A stretch of 64,000 nt of DNA, from IMG/VR virus record IMGVR_UViG_3300046542_000248, positions 1 through 64,000 of that record; one strand, written 5' to 3'. The stretch's first letter is position 1, and every line of letters starts with the position of its first letter. Of the stretch, positions 1,255 to 64,000 are shown in pieces. The notes beneath the pieces are model-generated. The model ran no database searches. It was not told where the DNA came from and worked only from the letters and a program-made list of their open reading frames with translations. A program made the position numbers and the translations under genes.

Positions 1255-1812
1255 ATGAAAGATTTATCTGAAAAGATTCATCAAGTTGTAGCCAATCATT
1301 TTACGGCTTTTGAAGTGATCATTGACCCTGATCACGAGAACGATGTTATGTATAAACTAAAGCTTGATAAGCGAATGAACGTAACGGGGATTGCGATATT
1401 TCCTAAAATTATTGCAAATGTAATTAAGGAAAACTTCACAATCTTCGAACGAATACTCTACGGCAAAAAGATTCAAGATGCCGCTGTACTGGTATTATCT
1501 TCTACTATTTCTAATCTTACAAAATCCAGAGATTGTCTTGAATCGCTGGCAAATCATATCAGAACTGATATTCAAACTGAACTAGAGTACGAGCAATTGA
1601 AACCTCAGCTTGAAGCAACGCTTGCAAAACTTTCTAACTTGGTAATTCCCTATCAGGATAGAAATAAATATCTGATTCAACCTAACATTACAGTTAACTT
1701 AGAATCTAAGCTCCCTGTTATCTTTTCTAACATTGAGCTTAACAGCTTCATGAATGTAATTGGGTATAGACCAGAGAAAAATAGTAGAGGGAAGGTGTTA
1801 CCTTGGCAGTAG
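1255..1812 (+). CDS. Hypothetical protein upstream of RNAP beta' subunit
   Basis: GGAGG SD 8 nt before ATG 1255; stop overlaps the start of the next gene. Confidence 0.75.
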   Translation: MKDLSEKIHQVVANHFTAFEVIIDPDHENDVMYKLKLDKRMNVTGIAIFPKIIANVIKENFTIFERILYGKKIQDAAVLVLSSTISNLTKSRDCLESLANHIRTDIQTELEYEQLKPQLEATLAKLSNLVIPYQDRNKYLIQPNITVNLESKLPVIFSNIELNSFMNVIGYRPEKNSRGKVLPWQ

Positions 1813-49200: not shown

Positions 49201-51183
49201 GGCTCTGCGGCACCATTGATGTCTGGTACTGCAACTGTTGGTACAGCTACTAAATTTTCTAGGGAAGATCATATTCACCCTAGTGACACAAGTAGAGCAC
49301 CTGCGGCTTCTCCTACTTTTACTGGGACTGTAACTATTCCTACGGCAACTGTTAATACTAATACGACTCAAGCTGCTTCTACTGCATTCGTTATTGGTCA
49401 AGCAGCAACTGCTTCTCCTCTTATGGCAGGCACTGCAACTGTTGGTGTTGCAACTAGATTTGCTAGAGAAGATCATATTCATCCTAGTGATACGTCTAGA
49501 GCACCTACGGCTTCTCCTACATTTACTGGGATTGTAACTGTTCCTACACCAGCAAATGGTGATAATTCAACAAAAGCTGCAACAACTGCCTTTATTAATA
49601 ACTTATTGTCAGGGAATAGTATTTCTGATGGTATTACTTGGACAGCACGAACAAGTGCTGCTGATAATCAATGGCAGTCAATCTGTTATGGTAATGGATT
49701 ATATGTAGCAGTTGCTGGAACTGGTACGGGTAACAGGGTCATGACTTCCCCTGACGGTATTACTTGGACAACAAGAACAAGTGCTGCTGATAATAGCTGG
49801 GTTTCTGTTTGTTATGGTAATGGATTATTTGTAGCAGTTGCTTATGGTAGTTCCCCAAATACTGTTATGACATCAACTGATGGTATTACTTGGACAATAA
49901 GAAGTTCTGGTAGTTGGTTAAGAGCAGTTTGTTATGGTAATGGATTATTTGTGGCTGTAACTGATACTACTAGTGTTATGACATCTCCTGATGGTATTAC
50001 TTGGTCAACAAGAACGGGTGCCAATGCTAATCAATGGAATTCAGTTATTTATGCTGCTGGATTATTTGTAGCCGTAGCGTCTACTGGTACTGGTAATAGA
50101 GTTATGACATCACCTGATGGTATCACCTGGACAGCACGAACAAGTGCTGCTGATAATGGTTGGTATTCAATTTGTTATGGTGCTGGTTTATTTGTAGCCG
50201 TTGCGATTGATGGTACAGGTAACCGTGTAATGACATCTCCTGATGCTATCACTTGGACAATAAGAACAAGTGCTGCTGATGTTGTTTGGAGATCAGTTGC
50301 TTATGGTGGTGGAATATTTGTAGCTGTTGCACAATCATCTACATTAATGACATCTCCTGATGGTATCACTTGGACCGCAAGAACGGCTTCTTCTGGTAAT
50401 AACTGGTTTTCAGTCTGTTATAATAACGGTTTATTTGTAGCTGTAGCAACTTCAGGTACAGGTAATAGAGTTATGACAAATAGTGGAACCCCGGCAGCAC
50501 CACTATCAGTTACTACTGCCGCTGTTAATACTAATACAAATCAAATAGCATCTACAGCGTTTGTATTAGGTCAAGCAGCAACTGCTTCCCCATTAATGGA
50601 TGGAGTTGCAACTGTCGGTACTTCTACTAAATTTGCTAGAGAAGATCATGTTCATGCTAGTGACACTTCTAGAGCACCTACGGCTTCACCTACATTTACT
50701 GGAACTGTAGTATTACCTTCAACTACTAGTATCGGTTCTGTAACTGCAACTGAACTTGGATACTTATCCGGTGTAACTAGCTCTATTCAAACACAATTAA
50801 ATGCTAGAGCAACATCTGCTTCTCCTACATTTACTGGAACTGTGATCGCTCCTACACCAGCAGTTGATAATAGTTCTACTCAAGTATCAACAACTGCATG
50901 GTATATGGGTCAACGTGCACCAAGTGTACCTGTTATGAATGGAGCTGCTGCAATAGGGTCATCTTTAAAATGGGCAGCTTCTGACCATGTTCATCCAAGT
51001 GATACAAGCAGAGCGGCTGCGGCTTCTCCTACTATTACAGGAGTTCTTACAGCAAGTGGTTCTATCGTAACTCCTTTAATCACTGCAAATGCTGTTGAGG
51101 TAAAATCTAGTGCTACCACTAAGAAATTTACTTTAGATTATAATGAAACTGAAGATTCACTTGATTTTATCTATACACCGTAA
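46204..51183 (+). CDS. Long tail fibre protein with HxH fibre repeats and one 7-bladed beta-propeller
   Basis: Repeated SPTFTG..PT....NTTQAASTAFV and AREDHxHP; 7 W..VCYGNG.FVAV...TSPDGITW blades; C-terminal YNETEDSLDF; start 46204 or 46216. Confidence 0.85.
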   Translation: MKDNMPPDVTKISFANFFNVFTDTSKMQNNELAFDSSYRLVYKDNTGVLRNIVSVNDYANIYAPNSVNITQIVKSAKVGVGTEGDFSAKVTKSMPLSNIVTATGIHNRLMLVQYDNNNNLKDTILFPEYFCKLGTYADTMDINKGIITEIIRKVKIDANLGVTTLTNNKIFKIYLTETTDVATTLNLPLTVEANKDVIANRNQMYIGADGYLYIIKDKAVSDLTYSFWVFNRRTTSVKVKVNTTIPLLEKNDNFVFESYRYVSDNIVGTSYQFVGSGETVQITKILSAIKTSSLGKEDVTLTISGDKKSVNGIQNGAYYTINVITDETPVIPSLVYQFLDVQDGFFGYLYTILKSINDNEHQTPIDIDAIVETVRLALLSYMDDKLLPKADLDSPNFIGVPKVPTAAVNTNTTQAASTAWVIGQASSASPLMDGAATIGVSLKYSREDHVHPIDTSRAPAASPTFTGTVTIPTAGVNTNTTQAASTAFVIGQAATATPLMAGVAAVGTATRFAREDHKHPIDTSRAAVDSPTFTTIVKTPDIDMLGNELWNSANLPIINMIPDSGRFMGNQQDPYAIQSGIAFTINNEFFAPYNGGNNSTGGKFIHNNTDNGGSAGSMTADAIALVNAMNTIAGADKRYGAEFHILDITQGSGTSLPHATNTSHYLLTTNNSKNIAGGGDYFTFSFWVRLKTGSGATISRSIKLAKNGIDVTASFLNISTADGWMHIQSVYKPSTGYDNTAPQIYAPSGAVIEIAIPVIASGGSGTGIHTSPIPRLDLGFTAASTASPTFTGTVTLPATTSIGPVTATELGYISGVTSSIQTQLNARATSASPTFTGTVTIPTAAVNTNTTQAASTAFVLGQAATASPLMAGVATVGTATKFAREDHVHPSDTSRAPTASPTFTGTVTIPTAAVNTNTTQAASTAFVLGQAGSASPVMNGTATVGVATKFAREDHVHPSDTAKADTASPTFTGTVTIPTAAVNTNTTQAASTAFVIGQAGSAAPLMSGTATVGTATKFSREDHIHPSDTSRAPAASPTFTGTVTIPTATVNTNTTQAASTAFVIGQAATASPLMAGTATVGVATRFAREDHIHPSDTSRAPTASPTFTGIVTVPTPANGDNSTKAATTAFINNLLSGNSISDGITWTARTSAADNQWQSICYGNGLYVAVAGTGTGNRVMTSPDGITWTTRTSAADNSWVSVCYGNGLFVAVAYGSSPNTVMTSTDGITWTIRSSGSWLRAVCYGNGLFVAVTDTTSVMTSPDGITWSTRTGANANQWNSVIYAAGLFVAVASTGTGNRVMTSPDGITWTARTSAADNGWYSICYGAGLFVAVAIDGTGNRVMTSPDAITWTIRTSAADVVWRSVAYGGGIFVAVAQSSTLMTSPDGITWTARTASSGNNWFSVCYNNGLFVAVATSGTGNRVMTNSGTPAAPLSVTTAAVNTNTNQIASTAFVLGQAATASPLMDGVATVGTSTKFAREDHVHASDTSRAPTASPTFTGTVVLPSTTSIGSVTATELGYLSGVTSSIQTQLNARATSASPTFTGTVIAPTPAVDNSSTQVSTTAWYMGQRAPSVPVMNGAAAIGSSLKWAASDHVHPSDTSRAAAASPTITGVLTASGSIVTPLITANAVEVKSSATTKKFTLDYNETEDSLDFIYTP
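48697..49512 (+). repeat. Four tandem 204-bp (68-aa) coding repeats in the tail fibre
   Basis: TCTCCTAC unit starts at 48697, 48901, 49105, 49309 and 49513, exactly 204 nt apart. Confidence 0.9.
49633..50478 (+). repeat. Seven ~126-bp blade repeats (one beta-propeller)
   Basis: Seven W-x-x-[VI]-[CAI]-Y units with Asp-box-like TSPDGITW. Confidence 0.85.
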
Positions 51184-51184
51184 C

Positions 51185-51224
51185 AAAAAGACTGGATGGC
51201 TCCCTATTTGGGACCATCCAGTTT
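51185..51224 (+). terminator. Intrinsic terminator
   Basis: ACTGGATGG...CCATCCAGT stem plus TTTT. Confidence 0.65.
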
Positions 51225-51275
51225 TATCTGTTAAACCATATATAAATCTAATAACGTGAAAGGTGTGAAATATAA

Positions 51276-54200
51276 ATGCCTACAATTGGTAGACTTAAAT
51301 TTGGTGATTTAATGGTTGCTGGGAAAATAAATGAAAGAACACAAGCTATTACTAATGGATTAATAGCACATTACCCATTCGATAATACTGCTATTGGTGA
51401 GGATTGGAATAAGAAAAGAAATTTGGTAGATTACAGTCAATGGAAGTTAGGAACTTCCGGTTCTCAAGGAAGTTTCAATCAAAATGGTACTACTAGTGAG
51501 AATCAGATTGTCAGATATCCAAATCCATGGGGTATAGATGATACGATATGGGGATGTTTAAATAATGATGTAACTAGTGATGCAGATGGTGGATGGAATT
51601 ATAATTCTGCACCTGTAGATAATACAAAAACTTATAGATTTTCTGTTTGGGTTAGACGTGAAGATGTTGGTGATGGGTACACATACTTTGGCCCTCAAAC
51701 AAGTACTGTGTCGCCATTAGGTTCGACCACTGCTGATAGTAATCCATATTTTACAAGTAAAAATGCTTCAAATCTTCCACAATCTGTAAATCAATGGTTA
51801 TTGTGGGTTGCACATGTTAGACCGTATGATTATGCAGGAGTAACTGCTCATAATGATTCTGGTATATATGATATTACCGGTAAAAAGGTAATGAATACTA
51901 TGATTGATTGGAAATGGCTAAATACAACTACCAGTAGTGGTCATAGAGCATATCTATACTATTCAACAGTTACTACAGAAAAACAATACATGTATCACCC
52001 AAGAATGGAAATGCTCGATGGCTATGAAAATACAGTACAAGAATTAATAATGGGTATTGAAGATAAAATCGACCCAGCTATTAATACTAACACCACTCTT
52101 AGAACTACTGGTTTATCTGTAGATTCTGCTACTGTTAATCTAGCAGATGGTGTATCATATGGAGCCTATGCTAGTGCTACACAGATTGGTGATTATTATG
52201 CATTACCAAACCCTGAAGATAAAACTTCTCAAAAATATGTAGTAAATGGAGTCGGATCTGTTGCAAGAGGTAGAAAAAATTTACCAGCAGTTACTGGAAA
52301 AACATATATCATGTCAATAGTAATGAAAATTACTGGAGCTGGTAGTATGTATGTAAGTCCATCTAAACCAAATCCTGAAGCATCGAATACGATAAATGTA
52401 ACAACTGTTCGATTAGCAACTATAGATCTTGGTGGTGGATGGTTTAAAATTATTGAATTATATACGATTGTATCTAACACCGTGGCATCTTGCATCTTCT
52501 GCTTTGGTATCTCTGGCGGAGCTGTAAATGATGAATTTTACGTGTATGATCTTCAATGGGAAGATAAAGCTTATCCTACAAGCTACGTTGCCGGAACTCG
52601 TGCCAGTAATAGTGTTTTCTCAATACCGAAATCAATGGTTCCTTCTACTGGTACATTCGTATTTGAATTTATGCCTAGAGCTTTTAGTGCTAATATGCCA
52701 ATTTTTTCTACTGGTGTAGATGGCTCTTCTGGCGGATTTGATTTGTTAATGCCAACTGCCGCAGGTTCAGGCGACACACTGTTTAGATGCTACAATGCTT
52801 CAAATTATTTTCAAGCATCAGGATCATCATCATGGTTCCCTACCTTATTTGCATGGTATGAAGTTGCTATTGCTTATACAAATAACGGAAGTGTCACGAT
52901 GTATATAAATGGAGATCCAGTTATAACTGTACCAAGTATAGGTGACTGGTTTGCAGCATTTACAGCATCTGGAACTGGTTTATATTTAGGAAGTGGCATA
53001 AGATCAGCAACCTCAATGGAATTTAGAAATGTATCTCTATATAACAGAGTCTTAACTGCTGCTGAGGTTTTAGAGAATTATTCTCCTACAAAATTTAAAT
53101 TATCTATTGATGGTAATATAAATATGCCAGTTGTAGAAAAACCTATTGGGATTCCTTCTGATGCATATTATTGGCCTCTTGGTGAAACTACACTTGATAC
53201 CACTTTCAAGTTTGATGCGATTGTTAAGGATGCTCTTACTTATAGGGACGGATATGCATGGGTACATTCAACTACTCAAGCAAATTTATTTCCAACTTAT
53301 CAAGATACATCAAATTTTGGGGTTAAAGGTGCTAGTAATTTTAAAACAATACAATTTGATGATTCAAATGTTATTTATAGATATGACTATTTTGGAGAAG
53401 GTACAAACTATAAAGGTCATGATATTGCTGTAACTTCTGGTACTAGTTACTTTTTTAGTATTGATGTTTTTGTATCTTCTGACTTTAATGGTAATACTAC
53501 GATGGTTGCCGGAATAGAAAATATCGTTGCTAATTATTTTAATTATAATATGAACAGAAAAGGAGTATGGCAACGGTTTACTTATACATTTACTGCACCT
53601 TCTTCTGGGATTGCTAGATTATTAATGTACCCTTGTGCTAATAATTCATCTGGTACTAAAGGTTATGTTTTGTATAGAAATCCTATGTTTACAGCTAGTG
53701 CTTATGAAGTTCCATTTTATAAAACAACTCGCATGAAAGGAAATCTTCAATTCAATCTGTATAATACAATAGGTCTTGACTGGAATAGTAACTGGTCAAT
53801 TGTTTATACAAAAATTCCTAAAGGTACAAGTAGTATTGGTAACTTAACAAATTACAATATTGATACTCTTGGTGCAAACTCGAACAGTGTTGGTGGAGGA
53901 TATAAATACTGGGGCAAAACAACTGGTGCTGATACTTTGAATATCACTAATGGTGGTATAATTGCAACTCTTACACCATCAGATTATTTTAACAGACCTC
54001 ATATGATTTCCATAGTAAAGAATGGGACTAATATTACATGGAAATTCTATGGAATCAATGGAACAATTACTTCACATACTCAGTCTATAGGAACAATCGC
54101 ATCTAATTATTTCGTAAATCAGTATGGTTATGACTTAAAGCTTGGTGGATGGGATAATACTAATGATTGTGGATCAATGTTTAAAGATCTATTCGTTGTA

Positions 54201-54311
54201 AAACGAGCAATGCTTGATGCTGATCTTGATCTTATGTGGAAAAGACAAATGAGAGTTAAGAATGGTAGACTCGAAGTTCAGGGCGGCATTTCTGATGGTT
54301 ACGTATTCTAA
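51276..54311 (+). CDS. Tail/receptor-binding protein with LamG and carbohydrate-binding-like beta-sandwich domains
   Basis: GLIAHYPFD, TYRFSVWV, GTFVFEF...WYEVAI...MYINGD...VSLYNRVL; N/G/T/S-rich. Confidence 0.75.
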   Translation: MPTIGRLKFGDLMVAGKINERTQAITNGLIAHYPFDNTAIGEDWNKKRNLVDYSQWKLGTSGSQGSFNQNGTTSENQIVRYPNPWGIDDTIWGCLNNDVTSDADGGWNYNSAPVDNTKTYRFSVWVRREDVGDGYTYFGPQTSTVSPLGSTTADSNPYFTSKNASNLPQSVNQWLLWVAHVRPYDYAGVTAHNDSGIYDITGKKVMNTMIDWKWLNTTTSSGHRAYLYYSTVTTEKQYMYHPRMEMLDGYENTVQELIMGIEDKIDPAINTNTTLRTTGLSVDSATVNLADGVSYGAYASATQIGDYYALPNPEDKTSQKYVVNGVGSVARGRKNLPAVTGKTYIMSIVMKITGAGSMYVSPSKPNPEASNTINVTTVRLATIDLGGGWFKIIELYTIVSNTVASCIFCFGISGGAVNDEFYVYDLQWEDKAYPTSYVAGTRASNSVFSIPKSMVPSTGTFVFEFMPRAFSANMPIFSTGVDGSSGGFDLLMPTAAGSGDTLFRCYNASNYFQASGSSSWFPTLFAWYEVAIAYTNNGSVTMYINGDPVITVPSIGDWFAAFTASGTGLYLGSGIRSATSMEFRNVSLYNRVLTAAEVLENYSPTKFKLSIDGNINMPVVEKPIGIPSDAYYWPLGETTLDTTFKFDAIVKDALTYRDGYAWVHSTTQANLFPTYQDTSNFGVKGASNFKTIQFDDSNVIYRYDYFGEGTNYKGHDIAVTSGTSYFFSIDVFVSSDFNGNTTMVAGIENIVANYFNYNMNRKGVWQRFTYTFTAPSSGIARLLMYPCANNSSGTKGYVLYRNPMFTASAYEVPFYKTTRMKGNLQFNLYNTIGLDWNSNWSIVYTKIPKGTSSIGNLTNYNIDTLGANSNSVGGGYKYWGKTTGADTLNITNGGIIATLTPSDYFNRPHMISIVKNGTNITWKFYGINGTITSHTQSIGTIASNYFVNQYGYDLKLGGWDNTNDCGSMFKDLFVVKRAMLDADLDLMWKRQMRVKNGRLEVQGGISDGYVF

Positions 54312-54370
54312 ATTATTACGTATTTAACTATCTATAAATCCCATCCCATAAACGAGGAGTTGTTATTTTC

Positions 54371-54748
54371 ATGAGTCATAATCATCACTTTTTCACGAAT
54401 CAAAGTATTCACACTTTAAACGATTGTATTGATACTGCAATGCGTCAAAATGGTATTGATGTTCTGCAAGATATTAATGCAGTATTGTATGAATTTACAA
54501 ATAACGTGGCTTCGGTTGAAGCTAACCACGACAAAGTTATTGCTCTTACACCGGCAGTTGCCGAAGTGGTTAAATCATTTGCAGATCTACACTTGAAAGT
54601 TAAAGGTGCTGCGGTAATCAAAGCAGTCGGGGTTATTCTTGATACAATTGATAATCCTCTTGCACCACCGCAACCGCAAGAACCGGTAGAAGAAGCTGCC
54701 CAAGAAGAAGTTGTTGAAGCAGCTGCTAGTCCCGAATCACAACAATAA
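54371..54748 (+). CDS. Small protein in the tail fibre cluster (possible chaperone/accessory)
   Basis: GAGGAG SD, 125 aa, high-expression-like codons, own terminator. Confidence 0.7.
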   Translation: MSHNHHFFTNQSIHTLNDCIDTAMRQNGIDVLQDINAVLYEFTNNVASVEANHDKVIALTPAVAEVVKSFADLHLKVKGAAVIKAVGVILDTIDNPLAPPQPQEPVEEAAQEEVVEAAASPESQQ

Positions 54749-54756
54749 ACCAATTA

Positions 54757-54789
54757 ATCAGGAAGAGTCTAAAAAGGCTCTTCCTGGTT
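54757..54789 (+). terminator. Intrinsic terminator
   Basis: AATCAGGAAGAG...CTCTTCCTGGTT plus T-run. Confidence 0.75.
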
Positions 54790-54815
54790 TTTTGTTTGTC
54801 AACTTTATATTATGA

Positions 54816-54827
54816 AACATCAAAATA
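54816..54827 (+). promoter_or_regulatory. Putative late promoter AACA-N6-TA
   Basis: AACAtcaaaaTA, 40 nt upstream of the CDS. Confidence 0.6.
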
Positions 54828-54866
54828 AGATACTTTATAATGGAAATGTGATAAGGAGGCTTATAT

Positions 54867-57800: not shown

Positions 57801-58658
57801 TGCTATGCTATTGGTTTATTTGTAGCTGTAGGGTTGAGTGGTACTGGTAACAGGGTTATGACTTCTCCTGATGGTATTACTTGGACTATTAGAACAAGTT
57901 CTGTTGATAATGCCTGGAGATCAGTTGTCTATGGTAATGGTTTATTTGTAGCGATATCTAATAGTGGTTTCCCTTCTATGGTTATGACTTCTCCTGATGG
58001 TATTACTTGGACTACAAGATCTGCTTCTGCTAATAATAACTGGCTCGCAGTTTGTTTTTCTAATGGTTTATTTGTAGCCGTAGGCGCTGCAGGTACTGGT
58101 AATAGAGTTATGACTTCTCCTGATGGTATCACTTGGACTACTAGAACAAGTGCTGCTGATAATAGCTGGACTACAATTTGTTATGCTAATGGTTTATTTG
58201 TAGCTATTGCATCGGATGGTCCAGGTAATAGAGTTATGACTTCTCCAGATGGTATCACTTGGACTATTAGATCAAGTGTCGCCGATAACGGCTGGGATTC
58301 AGTTTGTTATGGTAATGGATTATTTGTAGCTGTCGCACAATCGGGTACAGGTAACCGTGTTATGACAATGTATCGTTCAGATGAAGCAACTGATCAGATC
58401 TTACAAACTGTAACTAAACTTGCAACTAATTACAATACGGTTAGAAGTAGTAAAGATTCTAATGGAATATTTACTACTATTACAGTAAAAAGACCTGATA
58501 ACACCGTGTATCAAACATCTGTACTTTCTGGTGGAACAAGTCCAACTTATACTACTAGAACCATTACAACGTATGATACAAATGGTACTACAGTTTTAAG
58601 TACTAAATCATATGCATTAACTTACGACTCTGATGGAGATCTGGTAAGTGAGCTTTAA
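54867..58658 (+). CDS. Tail fibre/receptor-binding protein with three 7-bladed beta-propellers and a C-terminal adaptor-like domain
   Basis: N-terminal fibre repeats with two REDHxHP-type motifs; 21 blades in 3 groups of 7; C-terminal KDSNGIFTT...SVLSGGTSP.YTTRT...YDSDGDLVSE. Confidence 0.85.
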   Translation: MGEWHGGSTLGGYPLVVKAGTDNYLPRFSGRLLVNSSITDDGTTATLGNANITGTVSFSGPVTFSGTTSFSSGLTATTAAVNTNTTQLATTAFVIGQAATATPLMDGTATIGVATRFAREDHIHPTDTSRAPTASPTFTGTVTIPTAAANTNTTQAASTAFVIGQASNALPVINGTITAGVSSKFSRDDHVHPVDISRAPITSPAFLGTPTAQIQPPGTNSTALANTQFVQAAITTPSVWATRTSAADNQWMTVCYGNGTFVAVANTGTGNRVMTSTDGITWTIRTTPADNGWRFVCYGNGLFVAVAETTGTGNRVMTSPDGTTWTIRTSAADNDWKAVCFGNGLFVAVAATGTGNRVMTSPDGITWTIRTSAADNSWVSVCYGAGLFVAVANTGTGNRVMTSPDGITWTIRTSAANNTWRSICYGNGIFVVISFDTPSNRVMTSTDGINWTLRSSYVDNTWISVCYGGGLFVAVGNSGTGNRVMTSTDGITWAAKASAADYAWNSVCYGNGLFVAISYDGTGNRVMTMTRSVDVVDQIQSVISSYKSDINNLAGVFDTWTARTTPIDNAWLGICYGNGLFVAIANSGTGNRVMTSPDGITWTIRTSAADNNWAKVCYGAGLFVAVATTGTGNRVMTSPDGITWTIRTSAADNNWAGICYDNGLFVAVATSGTGNRVMTSPDGITWTIRTSAADNNWSSVCYGNGLYVAIAGSGTGNRVMTSPNGITWTIRTSPADNNWYTVCFGNGLFVSVAWSGTGNRVMTSPDGITWTLRVSPADIWWMALCYGNGVFISLAQTGTGNRVMTSPDGINWTQRLTPVDNQWTAICYGNGLFVGVSLDGAGNRVMTSAGPITVATRLSNLDTIDVTSKKNLDSVTQHTWVNRTSAADNQWVSVCYAIGLFVAVAQSGTGNRVMTSPDGINWTIRTSAADNNWQAVCYGAGLFVAVASTGTGNRVMTSPDGITWTIRTSAADNSWTAVCYAIGLFVAVGLSGTGNRVMTSPDGITWTIRTSSVDNAWRSVVYGNGLFVAISNSGFPSMVMTSPDGITWTTRSASANNNWLAVCFSNGLFVAVGAAGTGNRVMTSPDGITWTTRTSAADNSWTTICYANGLFVAIASDGPGNRVMTSPDGITWTIRSSVADNGWDSVCYGNGLFVAVAQSGTGNRVMTMYRSDEATDQILQTVTKLATNYNTVRSSKDSNGIFTTITVKRPDNTVYQTSVLSGGTSPTYTTRTITTYDTNGTTVLSTKSYALTYDSDGDLVSEL
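55583..58370 (+). repeat. 21 ~126-bp blade repeats
   Basis: Unit spacing 126 nt (for example 56682 to 56808); near-identical ATGACTTCTCCTGATGGTATYACTTGGAC cores. Confidence 0.9.
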
Positions 58659-58690
58659 GAATTTTATCATAGCTATTAAACAGTAAAACA

Positions 58691-58724
58691 TAAAGATAGG
58701 GAGGACAATTTCTCCCTATCTTTA
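58691..58724 (+). terminator. Intrinsic terminator
   Basis: TAAAGATAGGGAG...CTCCCTATCTTTA 13-bp stem. Confidence 0.7.
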
Positions 58725-58777
58725 TTAGTTATATTTAAACTATATAAAATTTATAATATTAAAAAGGAGGTTTCCTT

Positions 58778-61700
58778 ATGTTAGATATATTTCAACATGG
58801 TGTAGGTCAAACAAAAAAAACATTAGCCCCAGCTAGTAAATGGGATATAAGAACGGGTGCTGTAGATAATTTCTGGAAAGGTATTTGTTATGGTAATGGT
58901 TTATTTGTGGCTGTAGCTTATGCTGGTACAAATAGAATAATGACTTCTCCTGATGGTATTACTTGGACATCACGGACAAGTACTTATGAAAATGCATGGA
59001 ATTCAATCTGTTATGGTAATGGTTTATTTGTAGCTGTAGCTTATGCTGGTCAAGTTGGAACGCTTATATTGACTTCTCCTGATGGTATTACTTGGACACA
59101 TAGAACAAACCCTAATGCTAATCAATGGTGGGCAGTCTGTTATGGTAATGGAGTATTTGTAGCTGTCGCACAAACTGGTACTGGTAATAGAGCAATGACC
59201 TCTCCTGATGGGGTTAACTGGACAGCAAGAACAACTCCCGCTGATAATCAATGGCGTGGACTTACTTATGGTAATGGTTTATTTGTAGCAGTTTCAAATG
59301 ATGGTACAGGTAATAGAGTCATGACTTCCCCTGATGGTATTACCTGGACTATTAGAACAAGTTCCTCCGATGATGGGTGGATTTCAGTCTGTTATGGTAA
59401 TGCATTATTTGTGGCCGTTTCAAATTCAAGCAAAAAAGTAATGACTTCCCCTGATGGTATTAACTGGACAACAAGAACTGGAGGCATTACCAATGGAGCT
59501 ATATTAGTCACATATGATAACGGTATATTTGTAGCGGTATCATATGATGCAGCAGGTAGCAATGTAATGACTTCTCCTGATGGTGTTACCTGGATTACAA
59601 GAACTACATCTACTACCAATACTTGGCAAGCAGTTTGTTATGGTAATGGATTATTTGTAGCTGTAGCGTCTACTGGCACAGGTAATAGAGTAATGACAAG
59701 CGGTAGCATAAATATTCCCACACTTAGTAAAAATGTTGGAACTACGTGGCAAGTACAATCAAGCGCTGCTGATAATACATGGAGATCTGTATGTTATGGT
59801 AATGGATTATTTGTAGCAGTATCTGATTCGGGTACTGCCGGATATCGTATAATGACATCTCCTGATGGTATTAACTGGACTTTAAGAGCTACTCCTGGCG
59901 ATTATGCATACTATTCAGTATGCTATGGTAATGGTATATTTGTGGCACTTGCAGTTTCTGGTGGTGTATATATGACATCATTCGATGGTATTAACTGGAC
60001 ATTAAGAACACCTCCTATTGCTCTTGCATGGAGGTGGGCTTGTTATGGTAATGGATTATTTGTAGCAGTTGCACAAGGTGGTACAAATAACCAAGTTATG
60101 ACCTCCCCAGATGGGATTACCTGGACTGTAAGAACAACTCCTGGCGCTAATCAATGGAATTCAGTTGTTTATGGCAATGGACTATTTGTAGCTGTTGCAT
60201 CGCTTGGTACGAATAATAGGGTTATGACTTCTCCTGATGGTATTACTTGGACATTAAGAACTACAGGTATTAGTGGTAGCGGTACTACTACAATAGTAAA
60301 TTCAGGTGGAGTGTTTGTACAAGTTTCATTAGCCTATGCACCTGACACATTAAACTTAACATCTGGAGCACACACTATTTCATACACATCAGCAACTCCT
60401 GACAGATATGTTATAGATGGTGTAACGAAATTATTCTCCTCTGAGGGTGGATATGTAAATTCTACAGGATTCAAACTCTGGTTAACACCTTGGGGATTAA
60501 GTGCGGGAGCATCAGTAAACTGGTCTAGCACTGCGGATAATGGATGGTTTTCAGTCTGTTACGGTGCTGGTTTATTTGTAGCTACTGCAATGACAGGTAC
60601 AGGAAATCGTATAATGACATCTCCTGATGGTATCACATGGACATCACAAATAAGTCCTGCTGATAATGATTGGTATTGTGTTTGTTATGCTAATGGATTA
60701 TTTGTATCTGTGGGTGCTACTGGTACTGGAGATAGAATTATGACCTCTAAAGATGGTATTACTTGGGTTACACGAGCAAGTATTGATAATACTTGGAGAG
60801 GTGTTTGTTTTGGTAATGGTATATTTGTAGCTGTTGGTATTGATGGGGTAGGTAATAGGGCAATGAATTCTGGCACCGTAATTGATAATACTCTTTCTGC
60901 TGAATTTGCTATAAGAAAACCTGAACTCGGATCTACATGGCAAATAAGGTCAACCCCTGTTGATAATCAATGGCTTTCAGTTTGTTATGGTGGTGGTATA
61001 TTTGTAGCTGTAGCAATTTCTGGTACTGGGAATCGTATCATGGCTTCTGCAGATGGAGTTAACTGGACAACACAAACAAGCCCTTCTGATAATATGTGGT
61101 ATTCAATCTGCTACGGTAACGGAATGTTTGTAGCTGTGGCTGCTGGTGGGTATATAATGTATTCTTCAGATGGAGTTGTCTGGGCTTCAAAACAAGTTCC
61201 ATGGAATCATGCATGGTATAGTATTTGTTATGGTAATGGGACATTTGTAGCTGTATCAGCTAATAGTGTAGGTGGTAACACCGCAGCAATGACTTCTAAA
61301 GATGCTATTAACTGGACTTTAAGATCAACCCCTGCCGATAATCAATGGTACGGTCTTGCGTATGGTAATGGATTATTTGTAGCCGTAGCAATCTCTGGTA
61401 CAGGTAATAGAGTTATGACTTCTCCTGATGGTATTACATGGACAATAAGAACAACACCCATGGATAATGCTTGGATTGCAGTTTGTTATGGTGCTGGTTT
61501 ATTTGTAGCTGTAGGTTTTGATGGCACTATAAATAACTGTGTAATGACTTCTCCTGATGGTATTACTTGGACAATAAGAACTGCCGCATCTAATAATAAA
61601 TGGGTTAGTATAGCATACGGTAGTGGATTATTTGTAGCTATTTCCTTTGATGCTACCGGTAATAAAGTTATGGTATCTTCAAATGGTATTAATTGGTCAT

Positions 61701-63646
61701 TAAAACCGAGTGCAGGAAATAATCTATGGAGAGGTATTTGTTATGGTAACGGTATATTTGTAGCTGTAGCATATACTGGAAGTACCGGTAATCTGGTAAT
61801 GACAAGCTCAGGTGGTGCTAATACTGATACTAGCCTAGCTAAATCATACTCAGATACAATAGTTAAAGCGGGTATAAAATGGTCAGCAAAAAACGCATTA
61901 CCTAGTTTTGGTGCTAATAATTTGTGCTATGGTAATGGTTTATTTGTGGCTGTAATGTACACAGGTACAGATAGAGTTGCAATTTCTCAAGATGGTGTCA
62001 ATTGGACCTCAATAAATAGCCCTCTTGGTAATAACTGGTCTGCTGTTTGTTATGGTAACGGTGTATTTGTAGCAGTTTCAAATGGTGGTGTAGGTACTAG
62101 AGCCATGTCTTCTTTTGACGGGGTTACATGGACTCAACGAACAAGTGCTGCTGATAATAACTGGGCTGCTGTTTGTTACGGTAATGGATTATTTGTAGCT
62201 GTTGCAGTTACTGGTACAGGTAACCGTGTTATGACTTCACCTGATGGTGCTACTTGGACAGCAAGAACTACACCTGCTGATAATAACTGGAGTTCAGTTT
62301 GTTACGGTGCTGGTATATTTGTAGCTGTAGCAACTACAGGTACGGGTAATAGAGTTATGTCTTCTCCTGATGGAATTACTTGGACACTAAGAACAAGTGT
62401 TGCTGATAATAGTTGGTATGATGTTTGTTATGGTAACGGTATATTTGTAGCTGTAGCATATAACGGCACCACAGCTAATCAAATTATGACTTCTCCTGAT
62501 GGTATTACGTGGACAGCAAGAACTAGCCCATCAGCCAATGGATGGTATCTAACATGTTTTGGTAATGGTGTATTTGTATCTATTGGGGATACAGGCACTA
62601 GTAAAATTATGATTTCTGTAGATGGAGTTAACTGGACCTTAAGAACTGGAACAATTACTGGTAGTTCTTGGATGGGCTTCGTCTATGGCAATGGTATATA
62701 TTTAGTAGTCTCAGATAGTAATGGTAAATCAATGGTATCAAATGATGGTATAAAATGGTCGGCACCATATTTTACTGTAGATAATAACTGGAGTTCAGTA
62801 TGCTACGGTAATGGATTATTTGTAGCTGTTGGTACATCAGGAACTGGAAATCGCGTTATGACGTCACCTGATGGTCTTACTTGGACTACTAGAACAAGCG
62901 CTGCTGATAATAGCTGGACTGCTGTTTGTTATGGTAATGGATTATTTGTAGCGGTGGCGCTTAGTGGTACTGCATCGACTAGAGTTATGACCTCGCCTGA
63001 TGGTATTACTTGGACAACTAGATCAGCCACTACTACCAATTTTTGGAGATCTGTTTGTTATGGTAATGGATTATTTGTAGCCATCGCATCTACCGGTTCA
63101 CCTTCTCAAATTATGACTTCTCCTGATGGTATTACTTGGACCGCAAGAACTACTCCTCTTGATAACAGTTGGCAGTCAGTTTGTTATGGTGCTGGATTAT
63201 TTGTGGCTGTAGGACCCCTCACTGCATCAGTGGATGGAGTTATGACTTCTCCTGATGGAATTACTTGGACTGTTAGGTTAGGAGCTTCTCTTAATTACTG
63301 GTGTTCAGTTTGTTATGGTAATGGTTTATATGTAGCAGTTTCAAACGCTACTGGTACAGGTAATCGTGTAATGACTTCTTCTGATGGTCTTACTTGGACA
63401 TCAAGAACAACTCCTGCTGATAATGGATGGAATTCAGTATGCTACGGTAATGGATTATTTGTAGCTACTGCAATGTCAGGCACTGGTAATAGAGTAATGA
63501 CATCACCTGATGGTATCACTTGGACTTTACGAGCAACCAATGTTGATAATCAATGGGGTTCGGTATGTTATGGTATTGGCACATTTGTATCTGTATCAGT
63601 CGATGGTACAGGTAACAGAGCCATGACTTCATCTCTACAATATTAA
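58778..63646 (+). CDS. Receptor-binding-type protein with five 7-bladed beta-propellers
   Basis: 35 blades in 5 groups of 7; short N-terminal MLDIFQHGVG peptide; AAGGAGG SD. Confidence 0.85.
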   Translation: MLDIFQHGVGQTKKTLAPASKWDIRTGAVDNFWKGICYGNGLFVAVAYAGTNRIMTSPDGITWTSRTSTYENAWNSICYGNGLFVAVAYAGQVGTLILTSPDGITWTHRTNPNANQWWAVCYGNGVFVAVAQTGTGNRAMTSPDGVNWTARTTPADNQWRGLTYGNGLFVAVSNDGTGNRVMTSPDGITWTIRTSSSDDGWISVCYGNALFVAVSNSSKKVMTSPDGINWTTRTGGITNGAILVTYDNGIFVAVSYDAAGSNVMTSPDGVTWITRTTSTTNTWQAVCYGNGLFVAVASTGTGNRVMTSGSINIPTLSKNVGTTWQVQSSAADNTWRSVCYGNGLFVAVSDSGTAGYRIMTSPDGINWTLRATPGDYAYYSVCYGNGIFVALAVSGGVYMTSFDGINWTLRTPPIALAWRWACYGNGLFVAVAQGGTNNQVMTSPDGITWTVRTTPGANQWNSVVYGNGLFVAVASLGTNNRVMTSPDGITWTLRTTGISGSGTTTIVNSGGVFVQVSLAYAPDTLNLTSGAHTISYTSATPDRYVIDGVTKLFSSEGGYVNSTGFKLWLTPWGLSAGASVNWSSTADNGWFSVCYGAGLFVATAMTGTGNRIMTSPDGITWTSQISPADNDWYCVCYANGLFVSVGATGTGDRIMTSKDGITWVTRASIDNTWRGVCFGNGIFVAVGIDGVGNRAMNSGTVIDNTLSAEFAIRKPELGSTWQIRSTPVDNQWLSVCYGGGIFVAVAISGTGNRIMASADGVNWTTQTSPSDNMWYSICYGNGMFVAVAAGGYIMYSSDGVVWASKQVPWNHAWYSICYGNGTFVAVSANSVGGNTAAMTSKDAINWTLRSTPADNQWYGLAYGNGLFVAVAISGTGNRVMTSPDGITWTIRTTPMDNAWIAVCYGAGLFVAVGFDGTINNCVMTSPDGITWTIRTAASNNKWVSIAYGSGLFVAISFDATGNKVMVSSNGINWSLKPSAGNNLWRGICYGNGIFVAVAYTGSTGNLVMTSSGGANTDTSLAKSYSDTIVKAGIKWSAKNALPSFGANNLCYGNGLFVAVMYTGTDRVAISQDGVNWTSINSPLGNNWSAVCYGNGVFVAVSNGGVGTRAMSSFDGVTWTQRTSAADNNWAAVCYGNGLFVAVAVTGTGNRVMTSPDGATWTARTTPADNNWSSVCYGAGIFVAVATTGTGNRVMSSPDGITWTLRTSVADNSWYDVCYGNGIFVAVAYNGTTANQIMTSPDGITWTARTSPSANGWYLTCFGNGVFVSIGDTGTSKIMISVDGVNWTLRTGTITGSSWMGFVYGNGIYLVVSDSNGKSMVSNDGIKWSAPYFTVDNNWSSVCYGNGLFVAVGTSGTGNRVMTSPDGLTWTTRTSAADNSWTAVCYGNGLFVAVALSGTASTRVMTSPDGITWTTRSATTTNFWRSVCYGNGLFVAIASTGSPSQIMTSPDGITWTARTTPLDNSWQSVCYGAGLFVAVGPLTASVDGVMTSPDGITWTVRLGASLNYWCSVCYGNGLYVAVSNATGTGNRVMTSSDGLTWTSRTTPADNGWNSVCYGNGLFVATAMSGTGNRVMTSPDGITWTLRATNVDNQWGSVCYGIGTFVSVSVDGTGNRAMTSSLQY
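58841..63630 (+). repeat. 35 ~126-bp blade repeats
   Basis: Counted from the translation; linkers of about 20-30 aa after every 7th blade. Confidence 0.88.
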
Positions 63647-63684
63647 AGATAGGAATTGTTAATATTTTCATGGCTAAACAATAA

Positions 63685-63719
63685 AAATAAGGAATGTGTT
63701 CTTTACACATTCCTTATTT
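63685..63719 (+). terminator. Intrinsic terminator
   Basis: AAATAAGGAATGTGT...ACACATTCCTTATTT 15-bp perfect stem. Confidence 0.75.
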
Positions 63720-63760
63720 AATAAATTTATTAATTAAATTTATAATAGATGGGAGAGAAT

Positions 63761-64000
63761 ATGAACATGATAGAATCATATGTACATGGATTAGGAAGTA
63801 AAAGTAGTACTAGTAGTGATCCAGGTGTTAAATGGACTCCAAGAGTAACTCCTGCCGATAATGATTGGAGAGGCATCTGTTATGGTGCTGGTTTGTTTGT
63901 AGCTGTAGGGGCTTCAGGTACGGGTAATAGAGTAATGACTTCCCCTGATGGTATTAACTGGACTGCAAGAACAACTCCTATTGATAATAACTGGTTTGCG
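63761..64000 (+). CDS. Further beta-propeller repeat protein (5' partial, runs off the window)
   Basis: GGGAG SD; MNMIESYVHGLGSKSSTSSDPGVKWTPRVTPADNDWRGICYGAGLFVAV...TSPDGINW. Confidence 0.8.
   Translation, partial: MNMIESYVHGLGSKSSTSSDPGVKWTPRVTPADNDWRGICYGAGLFVAVGASGTGNRVMTSPDGINWTARTTPIDNNWFA

What the first reader, a model, noticed from the sequence alone, without database searches (positions are those of the whole stretch)
49633..64000. Array of nine 7-bladed beta-propellers built from one 126-bp blade with hypervariable positions: a possible combinatorial receptor-binding repertoire
Seen in sequence: three genes (46204, 54867, 58778) carry 7, 21 and 35 copies of a 42-aa unit, W-T-x-R-T-S-A-A-D-N-[x]-W-[x-x]-V-C-Y-G-N-G-L-F-V-A-V-[xxx]-G-T-G-N-R-V-M-T-S-P-D-G-I-T. 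The copies always fall in groups of exactly 7, and a fourth such gene starts at 63761. The scaffold is homogenised even at synonymous sites (ATGACTTCTCCTGATGGTATYACTTGGAC recurs many times across genes). Residues around the second Trp vary in almost every blade (QWMT, GWRF, DWKA, SWVS, NWAK, NWYT, WWMA, FWKG, QWWA, MWYS, YWCS and others), as do those after FVAV. Established: TSPDGITW is an Asp-box/BNR-like motif typical of beta-propellers. Inference: the variable residues line one face of each propeller, giving a TALE/DARPin-like fixed scaffold with variable residues that can be reshuffled by recombination or gene conversion between blades, diversifying host range without a reverse transcriptase.
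Basis: partly seen in the sequence, partly recalled or inferred. Interest (0 to 1): 0.85.

Follow-up and report, generated by a model that had tools for sequence, protein, structure and literature searches.

The report
Phage fibre genes with thirteen beta-propellers
Four neighbouring tail-fibre genes of an uncultured jumbo phage carry 13 near-identical seven-bladed propeller domains (92 blades) from a huge, unnamed protein family; a few residues on the binding face of each blade vary freely, so this is most likely a multi-site host-binding module, not a wholly new kind of system.

Summary
The window is nt 1-64000 of IMG/VR contig UViG_3300046542_000248 (246.9 kb jumbo phage). Blade counts are 7, 21 and 36 in the three genes. 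The fourth gene runs to contig nt 67435 and adds 28, giving 92 blades in 13 propellers. One group has 8 units.

AlphaFold2 with an alignment gives pLDDT 95.7, and the nearest solved fold is the 7-bladed Ycf48. The blade is not phage-specific. About 34,000 cluster representatives in bacteria, giant viruses and phages share the same consensus and the same variable positions (3, 11, 13, 27, 28; entropy r = 0.91). Phage blades are no closer to each other (58.7%) than to foreign blades (58.0%), so scaffold conservation comes from family-wide constraint.

At DNA level all 92 blades share codons beyond codon usage (0.63 vs 0.44), with no positional orthology. Linkage extends only 10 nt or less. Identical 40-56 nt tracts are in excess in g54867. 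Variable sites give omega of about 2.

By strand order these sites lie on the top face, the only face with a known function in Asp-box propellers. Relatives with about 50% identity keep the flanking genes and the fibre anchor but have no blades, so the array fills the exchangeable receptor-binding slot.

Ongoing blade shuffling that widens host range is plausible but untested. Fungal NWD WD40 repeats are the closest known analogue.

The parts
42030..46136 (+). 1368-aa protein with a Laminin_G_3 / concanavalin-like lectin domain; first gene of the conserved fibre module
   Evidence: Pfam PF13385, E 1e-29. An ortholog is present and syntenic in the relative L009.
46204..51183 (+). 1659-aa long fibre protein made of 68-aa repeats with an E-D-H-x-H-P motif, carrying one inserted propeller
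   Evidence: PHROG tail-fibre families, E 1e-37. Repeat listing. The L009 ortholog is 1309 aa, keeps the C-terminus and has no blades.
49639..50487 (+). Propeller 1 (7 blades), inserted inside a fibre repeat unit of g46204
   Evidence: Blade HMM. The fibre repeat resumes directly after the last blade.
51276..54311 (+). 1011-aa conserved fibre-module protein with a GTA head-spike-fibre-like domain; used as the marker to find relatives
   Evidence: NCBIfam NF048003, 38 bits against a cut-off of 36. Homologues at 52%, 50% and 41% identity.
54371..54748 (+). 125-aa protein conserved with L009; function unknown
54867..58658 (+). 1263-aa fibre protein: conserved N-terminal anchor of about 55 aa, two 68-aa fibre repeats, three propellers and a C-terminal region of about 95 aa
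   Evidence: Anchor is 59%, 52% and 29% identical in L009, L010 and L004, after which the sequences diverge completely. Blades.
55584..56465 (+). Propeller 2 (7 blades); this is the one modelled
   Evidence: AF2 with a 103-sequence alignment: pLDDT 95.7, pTM 0.92, 28 strands. Foldseek to Ycf48.
56544..57425 (+). Propeller 3 (7 blades)
57504..58373 (+). Propeller 4 (7 blades)
58778..63646 (+). 1622-aa protein made almost entirely of five propellers (36 units), with no fibre repeats
58841..59707 (+). Propeller 5 (7 blades)
59747..60883 (+). Propeller 6: 8 units. Unit 5 is degenerate and is followed by an insert of about 52 aa (nt 60365-60520). Whether it folds with 7 or 8 blades is not settled.
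60938..61822 (+). Propeller 7 (7 blades)
61910..62755 (+). Propeller 8 (7 blades; the first is partly degenerate). It abuts the next propeller with no linker.
62756..63634 (+). Propeller 9 (7 blades). The junction motif W-S-x-P-Y is shared with the fourth gene.
63761..64000 (+). Start of the fourth propeller gene. It runs to contig nt 67435, about 1224-1228 aa, with four more propellers (28 blades). A GGAG-like site lies upstream of the ATG at 63761.
54756..54789 (+). 15-bp stem-loop followed by a T run; terminator-like, upstream of g54867
58690..58725 (+). 16-bp stem-loop between g54867 and g58778
63685..63719 (.). 15-bp stem-loop between g58778 and the fourth gene
   Evidence: reported on the minus strand; the stem is palindromic.

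Best explanation
The region is the exchangeable receptor-binding part of the tail-fibre module of an uncultured jumbo phage of about 247 kb.

Architecture. Four adjacent genes display 13 seven-bladed, short-Asp-box beta-propellers. One is inserted in a long trimeric-type fibre. Three sit distal to a conserved N-terminal anchor. Nine are in two all-propeller proteins.

Family. The propeller belongs to a very large, unnamed family that overlaps Pfam DUF6242/DUF6242_C and has a Ycf48-like fold. Bacteria, giant viruses and phages use it as an extracellular module.

What is conserved and what varies. In every member the blade scaffold is held near one consensus by purifying selection. Five positions (3, 11, 13, 27, 28) on the top face vary. 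They lie next to conserved polar and aromatic residues: D9, N10, W12, N32 and R33.

Inferred mechanism. Each blade contributes one small binding sub-site around the conserved Trp. Each propeller is then a seven-fold multivalent binder, probably of surface carbohydrate, and the fibres carry dozens of slightly different sub-sites that give avidity and perhaps breadth.

Inferred origin. The phage's 92 blades descend from one blade type carrying Cys at position 16. They were amplified within this lineage and then diversified at the variable sites at or above the neutral rate, with some short-tract exchange between blades.
For: Shown:
- Blade and propeller counts.
- Fold.
- Family size: 33,972 representatives with E below 1e-3; 97 of the 120 best single-propeller homologues have exactly 7 blades.
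- Viral members in fibre-type proteins: a protein with an intramolecular-chaperone domain at 58% identity, a Hokovirus collagen-repeat protein, and the tail fibre of Caulobacter phage KSC.
- Cellular members: Bacteroidota-type T9SS cargo and a 3130-aa protein beside cell-wall genes.
- The same entropy profile in phage and family blades, r = 0.91, with the same residue preferences at variable sites (R, Y, N at position 13).
- Blade identity 58.7% within the phage against 58.0% to foreign blades.
- Codon sharing 0.63 against a null of 0.44, uniform across genes, with adjacent blades at 0.67.
- Cys at position 16 in 80 of 92 blades, where the family has mostly Thr.
- Omega about 2.0 at variable sites and 0.31 for the scaffold.
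- Fibre context: PHROG tail-fibre hits and HxH fibre repeats.
- Synteny: L009 and L010 keep the LamG protein, long fibre, g51276, g54371, the roughly 55-aa anchor and the downstream membrane proteins, but hold other distal domains and no blades.

From established knowledge: only the top face of Asp-box propellers is used functionally, and the Asp-boxes lie on the opposite face (PMC2716378).
Against: - No binding or virion-proteomics data exist, and the ligand is unknown.
- Placement of the variable residues on the top face rests on strand order. I had no access to model coordinates.
- The two all-propeller proteins have no recognisable fibre or anchor domain. Their N-termini resemble those of L010 accessory proteins only weakly (11-14% identity), so their attachment to the virion is not shown.
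- The omega estimate uses columns chosen because they are variable, a pairwise method, and sites close to saturation (pN 0.66 against a ceiling of 0.71).
- Family-wide residue preferences at the 'variable' sites show that they are not free of constraint.
Confidence: 0.65

Rival explanations
1. Active combinatorial repertoire. Blades are continually exchanged within and between the four genes by gene conversion or unequal crossing-over. New combinations of top-face residues arise quickly and are selected for altered host range, as in fungal NWD WD40 genes.
For: - No positional orthology between propellers: in-register minus off-register nucleotide identity is +0.005. This holds even between the architecturally matching C-terminal double propellers of genes 3 and 4 (0.657 against 0.652).
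- Uniform codon sharing across genes.
- Linkage confined to 10 nt or less.
- Excess of identical 40-56 nt tracts in g54867: 6 observed against 0.21 expected, exceeded in 0 of 300 permutations.
- Omega about 2 at variable sites.
- Adjacent blades are slightly more alike, also at variable sites: 0.166 against 0.13.
- A precedent exists in PMC1805685.
Against: - A fast burst of amplification followed by independent divergence also gives a star-like pattern with no linkage.
- The long identical tracts all lie over the most conserved peptide (R-V-M-T-S-P-D-G-I-T-W-T-I-R-T-S-A-A-D-N) and stop short of positions 11, 13, 27 and 28.
- Pairwise pS is 0.49, so any homogenisation is slow.
- No related genome carries the array, so no blade swap has been seen.
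Confidence: 0.25
2. Structural beads on a string. The propellers serve mainly as rigid spacers or bulk for long or curly fibres, and the variable positions are simply unconstrained surface residues with no ligand.
For: - The entropy pattern is the same in every family member, whatever its context.
- Two proteins consist of nothing but propellers.
- Omega is near the neutral range once selection bias and saturation are allowed for.
Against: - The variable residues cluster on the one face that is functional in all known Asp-box propellers (PMC2716378).
- They favour residues typical of interfaces, R, Y, N and F.
- The block occupies the slot where relatives carry other binding-type domains, such as a weak CBM96 match in L009.
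- The scaffold is under strong constraint, omega 0.31.
Confidence: 0.15
3. Enzymatic depolymerase. Like most characterised Asp-box propellers (GH33 sialidases, GH74 xyloglucanases), the domains hydrolyse a host surface polysaccharide.
For: Foldseek also lists GH74 tandem propellers. Phage fibres often carry depolymerases. Two pairs of propellers abut, as they do in GH74.
Against: - No glycoside hydrolase family is hit in Pfam or NCBIfam.
- The seven blades are near-equivalent, so no single differentiated active site is apparent.
- Sequence identity to any solved enzyme is insignificant.
Confidence: 0.07
4. Targeted hypermutation: a diversity-generating retroelement or similar system writes the variable codons.
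For: Variation is confined to a few codons in a conserved frame.
Against: - No reverse transcriptase was found among the ORFs scanned.
- There is no near-identical template/variable repeat pair. The longest exact repeat is 56 nt, and blades are about 64% identical.
- Variable positions include K, Q, M and W, which adenine mutagenesis of AAY codons cannot give.
- The same positions vary across the whole family.
Confidence: 0.02

Closest known systems
Asp-box / short-Asp-box beta-propeller superfamily, Ycf48 (HCF136)-like branch; Pfam DUF6242 and DUF6242_C
   Same: Seven four-stranded blades. The S-x-D-x-x-x-W hairpin lies between strands 3 and 4 in every blade. The bottom face is conserved and the top face variable. 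Ycf48 is the best solved fold match (TM 0.70). DUF6242 is hit above its cut-off (57 and 96 bits against 29).
   Different: About 15% sequence identity to Ycf48. The blades are almost perfectly repetitive. There is no link to photosystem assembly. It is extracellular or virion-borne and often multi-propeller. No Pfam model describes this blade as such; the EPTP hits are spurious matches to the repeat.
Fungal NWD/HNWD (HET-E, HET-D) WD40 repeat genes (PMC1805685, PMC2873952)
   Same: Repeats of about 42 aa in several genes. High internal conservation with concerted evolution within and between loci. Four positions per repeat on the interaction face are under diversifying selection.
   Different: A different propeller lineage (WD40), intracellular NLR receptors, and a eukaryote with RIP. 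In the fungi, repeat exchange is shown from population data; here it is only inferred from one genome.
Recently amplified, highly repetitive propellers (WRAP; Pereira and Lupas 2022, PMC9218822; PMC6805158)
   Same: Propellers arise by amplification of a single blade in all lineages, the Asp-box group included. Runs of 14 blades fold as two 7-bladed propellers. Lineage-specific signatures shared by all blades mark independent amplification. Here that signature is Cys16 together with shared codons.
   Different: WRAP has almost no synonymous differences. Here pS is 0.49, so the amplification is old or only slowly homogenised. The copy number (92 blades in 4 genes) and the phage fibre context are not described there.
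Phage receptor-binding proteins with propeller domains (Staphylococcus phage phi11 Gp45, PMC4901313) and multi-RBP phages
   Same: A propeller is displayed on a trimeric tail device and is implicated in recognising a cell-wall glycan. Distal domains are exchanged modularly on a conserved anchor.
   Different: phi11 has one five-bladed, non-repetitive propeller per chain and is unrelated in sequence. No described phage carries tandem arrays of Asp-box propellers, as far as my searches reached.
Multivalent propeller lectins (tachylectin-2, AAL, RSL, PVL; from my own knowledge, not tested here)
   Same: One sugar site per blade or inter-blade groove, with an aromatic platform plus Asp, Asn or Arg. 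Avidity comes from repetition.
   Different: These belong to other propeller lineages. No sugar binding has been shown for this family.
TALE / DARPin-type repeat scaffolds
   Same: A fixed repeat scaffold with a few specificity positions per repeat.
   Different: Those are open solenoids that read a linear target one repeat at a time. Here the repeats close into toroids of seven, so the variable residues form a ring-shaped surface rather than a code.

Membership tests
Asp-box / s-Asp-box beta-propeller superfamily | Four-stranded up-and-down blades arranged as a closed propeller | tested here: met
   AF2 with an alignment: pLDDT 95.7, 28 strands in 7 x 4. The top 1,118 PDB matches are propellers.
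Asp-box / s-Asp-box beta-propeller superfamily | S-x-D-x-G-x-x-W (Asp-box) or S/t-x-D/n-x-x-x-W/f/y (s-Asp-box) hairpin between strands 3 and 4 | tested here: met
   S37, D39 and W1 are conserved in at least 74 of the 81-89 blades aligned at each of those columns (92 blades in all). The spacing is that of the short form. The motif lies between the strand at positions 34-37 and the strand at positions 1-4 (PMC2716378). Pfam BNR (PF02012) itself was not hit for the window proteins.
Pfam DUF6242 (PF19755) | Score above the curated gathering threshold | tested here: met
   57.1 bits (g54867) and 95.9 bits (g58778) against a cut-off of 29. g46204 scores 22.7, below the cut-off. The match covers about two blades of the profile, so this shows relatedness, not a full-domain fit.
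Ycf48/HCF136 photosystem II assembly factors | Seven-bladed fold | tested here: met
   TM 0.68-0.73, E 1e-11.
Ycf48/HCF136 photosystem II assembly factors | Sequence membership and a photosynthetic context | tested here: not met
   14-16% identity in the structural alignment. No sequence hit to any PDB Ycf48 chain. The context is phage fibre genes.
Phage tail fibre / receptor-binding protein | Fibre or anchor domains shared with known tail fibres, and a position in a structural module | tested here: met
   g46204 hits PHROG tail-fibre families at E 1e-37, and g54867 at E 2e-8. The N-terminal anchor is conserved in three relatives. For g58778 and the fourth gene the evidence is position only.
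Phage tail fibre / receptor-binding protein | Presence in the virion and binding to the host | not testable with these tools
   Needs proteomics, cryo-EM or adsorption assays.
Concerted-evolution repeat repertoire (NWD type) | Repeats more alike within a genome than expected, with no orthology by position, within and between loci | tested here: met
   Codon sharing 0.63 against 0.44, equal within and between genes. In-register excess is only 0.005.
Concerted-evolution repeat repertoire (NWD type) | Observed repeat exchange or copy-number polymorphism between strains | not testable with these tools
   No related genome carries the array.
Concerted-evolution repeat repertoire (NWD type) | Positive diversifying selection at a few interface positions | tested here: inconclusive
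   Omega about 2.0 (1.8-2.2) by pairwise Nei-Gojobori counting. The columns were chosen post hoc and are near saturation, and no codon-model test was possible.
Diversity-generating retroelement target | Reverse transcriptase plus a template repeat, with adenine-specific variation | tested here: not met
   None found in the 71 kb examined. The residue spectrum is incompatible.

The most novel reading that the evidence does not exclude
The four genes form a self-renewing receptor repertoire. Short-tract exchange among 92 blades continually re-deals top-face residues over a scaffold that selection keeps fixed. That would give a jumbo phage an RT-independent, NLR-like way to track changing host surfaces. 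The 34,000-member family would then be a general natural binder scaffold used by phages, giant viruses and small-genome bacteria.
Probability: 0.2. Interest if true: 0.8.

Novelty: new variant of a known kind. Interest (0 to 1): 0.55.

Why it matters
This shows that a very abundant but unnamed and uncharacterised propeller family is a standard surface-binding module of viruses and bacteria. It also gives a clear example where the family fills the host-specificity slot of a phage fibre, in extreme copy number.

If the top-face positions prove to set ligand specificity, the family would be a natural, highly regular binder scaffold. The array would then be a bacterial-virus counterpart of the repeat-based recognition repertoires of fungal NLRs.

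For phage biology it offers a testable idea of how jumbo phages might gain avidity or breadth without many different receptor-binding proteins.

Tried and rejected
(1) My own error. In some searches five blades were read with shifted codons, because hmmalign trimming moved their offsets. This produced an apparent split into 'young' and 'old' propellers. It disappeared after the fix, and every conclusion based on it is withdrawn. All numbers cited come onward, or from the 38 gap-free blades.

(2) Single-sequence AF2 gave an unusable model (pLDDT 50).

(3) Sequence search of the PDB gave only chance matches to designed symmetric trefoils.

(4) Megablast against phage records found nothing. IMG/VR held only the source contig. 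The metagenome scan gave one relative at 41% with no blades. The two best relatives from the protein database (50-52%) also lack blades. Blade order could therefore not be compared.

(5) Codon context does not explain the codon sharing. A null that conditions on the next base rises only from 0.427 to 0.441.

(6) The many sigma-70-like TGGACA-N18-GATAAT hits are the blade's own W-T...D-N codons, not promoters.

(7) The N-terminal similarity of the two all-propeller proteins to L010 accessory proteins is too weak to use.

(8) DGR, enzyme and misassembly readings were rejected, as set out under rival explanations and the observation check.

Full report
**Where the window comes from**

The window is identical to nt 1-64000 of IMG/VR contig IMGVR_UViG_3300046542_000248, which is 246,901 bp. 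It is 31-40% G+C. It encodes split multisubunit RNA polymerase pieces that are 34% identical to those of Bacillus AR9/PBS1-like and Staphylococcus jumbo phages, and ribonucleotide reductase. It is therefore an uncultured jumbo phage with no close sequenced relative; megablast found nothing. A DNA pattern search recovered contig nt 57243-71423 as L002, so I could read the fourth gene to its end.

**Checking the observation**

Tandem Repeats Finder finds 126-nt periodicity from 49.6 kb to the end of the window. A blade HMM built from 15 blades of g54867 finds these units:

| Gene | Units | Grouping |
|---|---|---|
| g46204 | 7 | one propeller |
| g54867 | 21 | 7 + 7 + 7 |
| g58778 | 36 | 7 + 8 + 7 + 7 + 7 |
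| fourth gene (63749/63761 to contig nt 67435) | 28 | 7 + 7 + 7 + 7 |

- The locus holds 92 blades in 13 groups, nine of them complete in the window.
- Twelve groups have exactly seven units. The second group of g58778 has eight. Its fifth unit is degenerate and carries an insert of about 52 aa in place of the Asp-box loop.
- In g58778 and in the fourth gene, the last two propellers abut with no linker. They share a W-S-x-P-Y junction, so these two genes have a common architecture.
- The most variable columns are 3, 11, 13, 27 and 28, with 14 less so.
- Misassembly is unlikely. Blades are about 64% identical at nucleotide level, the longest exact repeat is 56 nt, and all ORFs are intact.

**Fold**

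A single-sequence prediction failed (pLDDT 50). With an alignment of 103 propellers (A1), AlphaFold2 gave pLDDT 95.7 and pTM 0.92, with 28 strands, four per 42-aa unit. Foldseek places the 7-bladed Ycf48 first among solved structures (TM 0.68-0.73), followed by designed and natural propellers, including GH74 tandem propellers.

The strand order per unit is:

- inner strand at positions 12-18
- tight turn at 19-20
- strand 2 at 21-26
- loop at 27-33
- strand 3 at 34-37
- S-P-D-G-I-T-W hairpin
- strand 4 at positions 1-4 of the next unit
- loop at 5-11

The first W-T-x-R strand of each propeller belongs to the last blade, which is the usual closure. The motif has the S-x-D-x-x-x-W spacing that Quistgaard and Thirup call the short Asp-box, and it lies in the loop between strands 3 and 4 (PMC2716378).

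That paper defines the top face as the N-terminal ends of the inner strands plus loop 2-3. It reports that the bottom face (loops 1-2 and 3-4, with the Asp-boxes) is structurally conserved, that the top is variable, and that only the top is used functionally in known structures. By that definition, positions 11 and 13 (start of the inner strand) and 27 and 28 (start of loop 2-3) are on the top face. Position 3 is near the top end of the outer strand. The near-invariant positions 19-20 and 37-42 are on the bottom. This is an inference from topology, because the tools did not give me coordinates.

**The family**

The blade is not a phage invention.

- A word-indexed search with one propeller gave 6,744 proteins at E up to 1e-5 among the 8,000 candidates scored, and the best were 55-75% identical over the whole domain.
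- An exhaustive search of 1.84 billion cluster representatives gave 33,972 hits at E up to 1e-3 and 8,356 at E up to 1e-30.
- 97 of the 120 best single-domain homologues have exactly seven blades.
- Partners include the T9SS sorting domain, FN3, Big_2, Hint and RHS.
- Multi-propeller giants are common: at least 64 blades in one 7,024-aa protein and 45-48 in a 3,130-aa protein. Runs of 7 dominate, with 205 runs of seven and 8 runs of fourteen.
- The 3,130-aa protein lies beside cell-division and cell-wall genes of a bacterium. Another lies on a contig that also carries a kinesin gene.
- The Atlas clusters are rich in Uroviricota and Nucleocytoviricota.
- BFVD matches include a phage protein with an intramolecular-chaperone domain (58% identity), a Hokovirus collagen-repeat protein, S-CBWM1 'BNR repeat' proteins and Caulobacter phage Percy.
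- In Caulobacter phage KSC the blades lie in the single annotated tail fibre gene.
- Pfam's only real match is DUF6242. The EPTP and other hits are repeat noise. NCBIfam has nothing.
- I found no paper that describes this family in phages.

**Scaffold and variable sites are family properties**

- The consensus of alignment A1 is the same 42-aa blade seven times, with undetermined residues at positions 3, 11, 13, 27 and 28.
- Per-column entropy of the 92 phage blades and of 807 blades from 120 other proteins correlates at r = 0.91. Residue preferences at the variable sites also agree: R, Y and N lead at position 13, and S, T and D at position 28.
- Blades of one protein are 66.0% identical on average, and blades of different proteins 61.1%. 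Phage blades are 58.7% identical to each other and 58.0% to foreign blades.
- At protein level, therefore, the uniform scaffold reflects family-wide purifying selection, not homogenisation inside this phage.
- The one clear lineage mark is Cys at position 16: 80 of 92 blades, where the family has mostly Thr.

**DNA-level history**

I first report an error. In some searches, five blades were read with shifted codons. This created a false contrast between 'young' and 'old' propellers. One search fixed it, and I withdraw that contrast.

Corrected results:

- Where two blades have the same amino acid, they use the same codon in 63% of cases. The phage's codon usage predicts 44%, and still 44% when the next base is taken into account.
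- The excess is column-specific and uniform: 0.630 within a propeller for non-adjacent blades, 0.624 between propellers of one gene, 0.628 between genes, 0.631 for the same blade index and 0.626 for different indices. Adjacent blades reach 0.670.
- In-register minus off-register nucleotide identity between propellers is +0.005. Between the matching C-terminal double propellers of genes 3 and 4 it is 0.657 against 0.652.
- Linkage between polymorphic sites is at the permutation level beyond about 10 nt and raised only below that.
- Within g54867, identical in-register tracts of 40 nt or more number 6, against 0.21 expected (0 of 300 permutations reach this). They all cover the most conserved peptide and stop before positions 11, 13, 27 and 28.
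- Three unrelated multi-propeller genes show the same kind of codon sharing, with an excess of 0.21-0.34. This fits the published view that propellers are continually amplified from single blades in all lineages (PMC9218822).

Taken together, the 92 blades descend from one blade type within this lineage. Their present relationship is star-like. That pattern fits a fast burst of amplification followed by independent divergence. It also fits slow concerted evolution by short tracts. One genome cannot separate the two.

**Selection**

By Nei-Gojobori counting over all blade pairs:

| Sites | Measure | Value | Ceiling |
|---|---|---|---|
| Scaffold codons | pS | 0.488 | 0.676 (codons redrawn) |
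| Scaffold codons | pN | 0.207 | n/a |
| Five variable columns | pN | 0.658 | 0.713 (random codon pairs) |

- Omega is 0.31 for the scaffold and about 2.0 for the variable columns. The bootstrap over blades gives 1.8-2.2, or 1.9-2.4 with empirical ceilings.
- The raw ratio pN(variable)/pS is 1.29-1.42.
- The variable residues have therefore turned over completely while synonymous sites have not.
- Caveats: the columns were chosen for their variability, the method is pairwise, and the sites are near saturation.
- I read this as 'at least neutral, probably diversifying'.

**Not a DGR**

None of the ORFs scanned matches a reverse transcriptase. There is no template/variable pair of near-identical repeats. 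The variable sites include K, Q, M and W.

**Genomic role**

g46204 hits tail-fibre PHROGs (E 1e-37). It consists of 68-aa repeats with an E-D-H-x-H-P motif, and its propeller is spliced into one such repeat. g54867 begins with a roughly 55-aa segment followed by two of the same repeats.

The best relatives of the neighbouring non-repeat protein g51276 are 52% (L010), 50% (L009) and 41% (L004) identical. L009 keeps the same gene order on both flanks:

- LamG protein
- long fibre (1309 aa, same C-terminus)
- g51276 homologue
- g54371 homologue
- a 98-aa protein that is the g54867 anchor alone
- a 779-aa protein with a weak CBM96 match
- the two membrane proteins that follow the fourth gene in our contig

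L010 has the anchor fused to a different 841-aa body, followed by other proteins. None of the three relatives holds a single blade. The anchor aligns at 59%, 52% and 29% identity and then similarity ends.

The propeller block therefore occupies the exchangeable distal slot of this fibre module, which is where phages place receptor-binding domains. Strong stem-loops follow g54371, g54867 and g58778.

**Mechanism proposed**

Shown: the architecture, the fold, family membership, the position in the fibre module, the pattern of conservation and variation, and the DNA statistics.

Inferred: each blade offers a sub-site on the top face, built from conserved D9, N10, W12, N32 and R33 and tuned by residues 11, 13, 27 and 28. 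A propeller would then be a seven-fold multivalent binder, probably of carbohydrate. The trimeric fibres and the two all-propeller proteins would present dozens of related sub-sites for avidity and perhaps breadth. How the all-propeller proteins attach to the virion is unknown.

**Comparison and novelty**

The fold and motif place this in the Asp-box superfamily, on the Ycf48-like branch, but it is not a Ycf48 protein. The evolutionary mode matches recently amplified propellers (PMC9218822, PMC6805158). If exchange is real, it also matches the fungal NWD WD40 repertoire (PMC1805685), which shares the repeat length of about 42 aa, several loci, concerted evolution and a handful of selected interface positions. 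Phage RBPs with propellers are known (phi11 Gp45, PMC4901313), but those are single, five-bladed and unrelated.

I rate this a new variant of known kinds: a large tandem array of an abundant, unnamed Asp-box propeller used as the variable part of a jumbo-phage fibre. Interest is moderate, at 0.55.

Noticed in passing
window 46204-51183 and 54867-55500: A 68-aa (204-nt) fibre repeat, S-P-T-F-T-G...N-T-N-T-T-Q...E-D-H-x-H-P, occurs about nine times in g46204 (seven with the HxH motif) and twice in g54867. HxH motifs recall the metal-binding repeats of T4-type fibre tips (from my own knowledge). The g46204 propeller is spliced inside one such unit.
   Followed up: partly
window 59747-60883: The one propeller group with eight units. 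Unit 5 has lost the Trp and Cys signature and is followed by a 52-aa insert where the Asp-box loop should be. It could be an 8-bladed propeller or a 7-bladed one with an extra subdomain.
   Followed up: no
blade position 16, all four genes: Cys in 80 of 92 blades, where the family mostly has Thr. This would put seven cysteines on the inner strands of each propeller, which is unusual for a virion-surface protein. It is a lineage signature shared by all four genes.
   Followed up: partly
window 54756-54789, 58690-58725, 63685-63719: Stem-loops of 15-16 bp sit in the three intergenic gaps around the propeller genes. They may be terminators or mRNA-stabilising hairpins.
   Followed up: no
window 49639-63424 (many sites): About 20 'promoter-like' TGGACA-N18-GATAAT hits are simply the W-T...D-N codons of each blade. 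They are an artefact of the repeat, not promoters.
   Followed up: yes
window 1803-3320 (+) and 9619-11199 (-): Split multisubunit RNA polymerase beta/beta-prime-like genes, 34% identical to those of AR9/PBS1-like Bacillus and Staphylococcus jumbo phages. They place the phage in a deep, unsampled branch of that group.
   Followed up: partly
L004 15216-16196 (contig RCUH01000011.1, 476 kb): The 41%-related huge phage carries a Kelch-like propeller protein of 326 aa just after its fibre gene. So a different propeller lineage sits in a comparable position. My reading of the sequence as Kelch-like was by eye and was not tested.
   Followed up: no
window 63632-63646, L002 10179-10193, L004 15192-15206: g58778, the fourth gene and the L004 fibre protein all end in ...(L/T)-Q-Y. 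This may be a shared C-terminal assembly signal, or chance.
   Followed up: no
L002 12660-13988 (-), contig nt 69902-71230: A 442-aa ORF downstream of the array looks like the C-terminal part of a polyphosphate kinase. This was judged by eye only and not searched.
   Followed up: no
window 42030-46136 and 51276-54311: Two large conserved fibre-module proteins carry lectin-type domains: Laminin_G_3, and a GTA head-spike-fibre-like domain. They flank the long fibre gene and are retained in all relatives, unlike the propellers.
   Followed up: partly
whole window: ARAGORN finds no tRNA genes in the 64 kb.
   Followed up: yes
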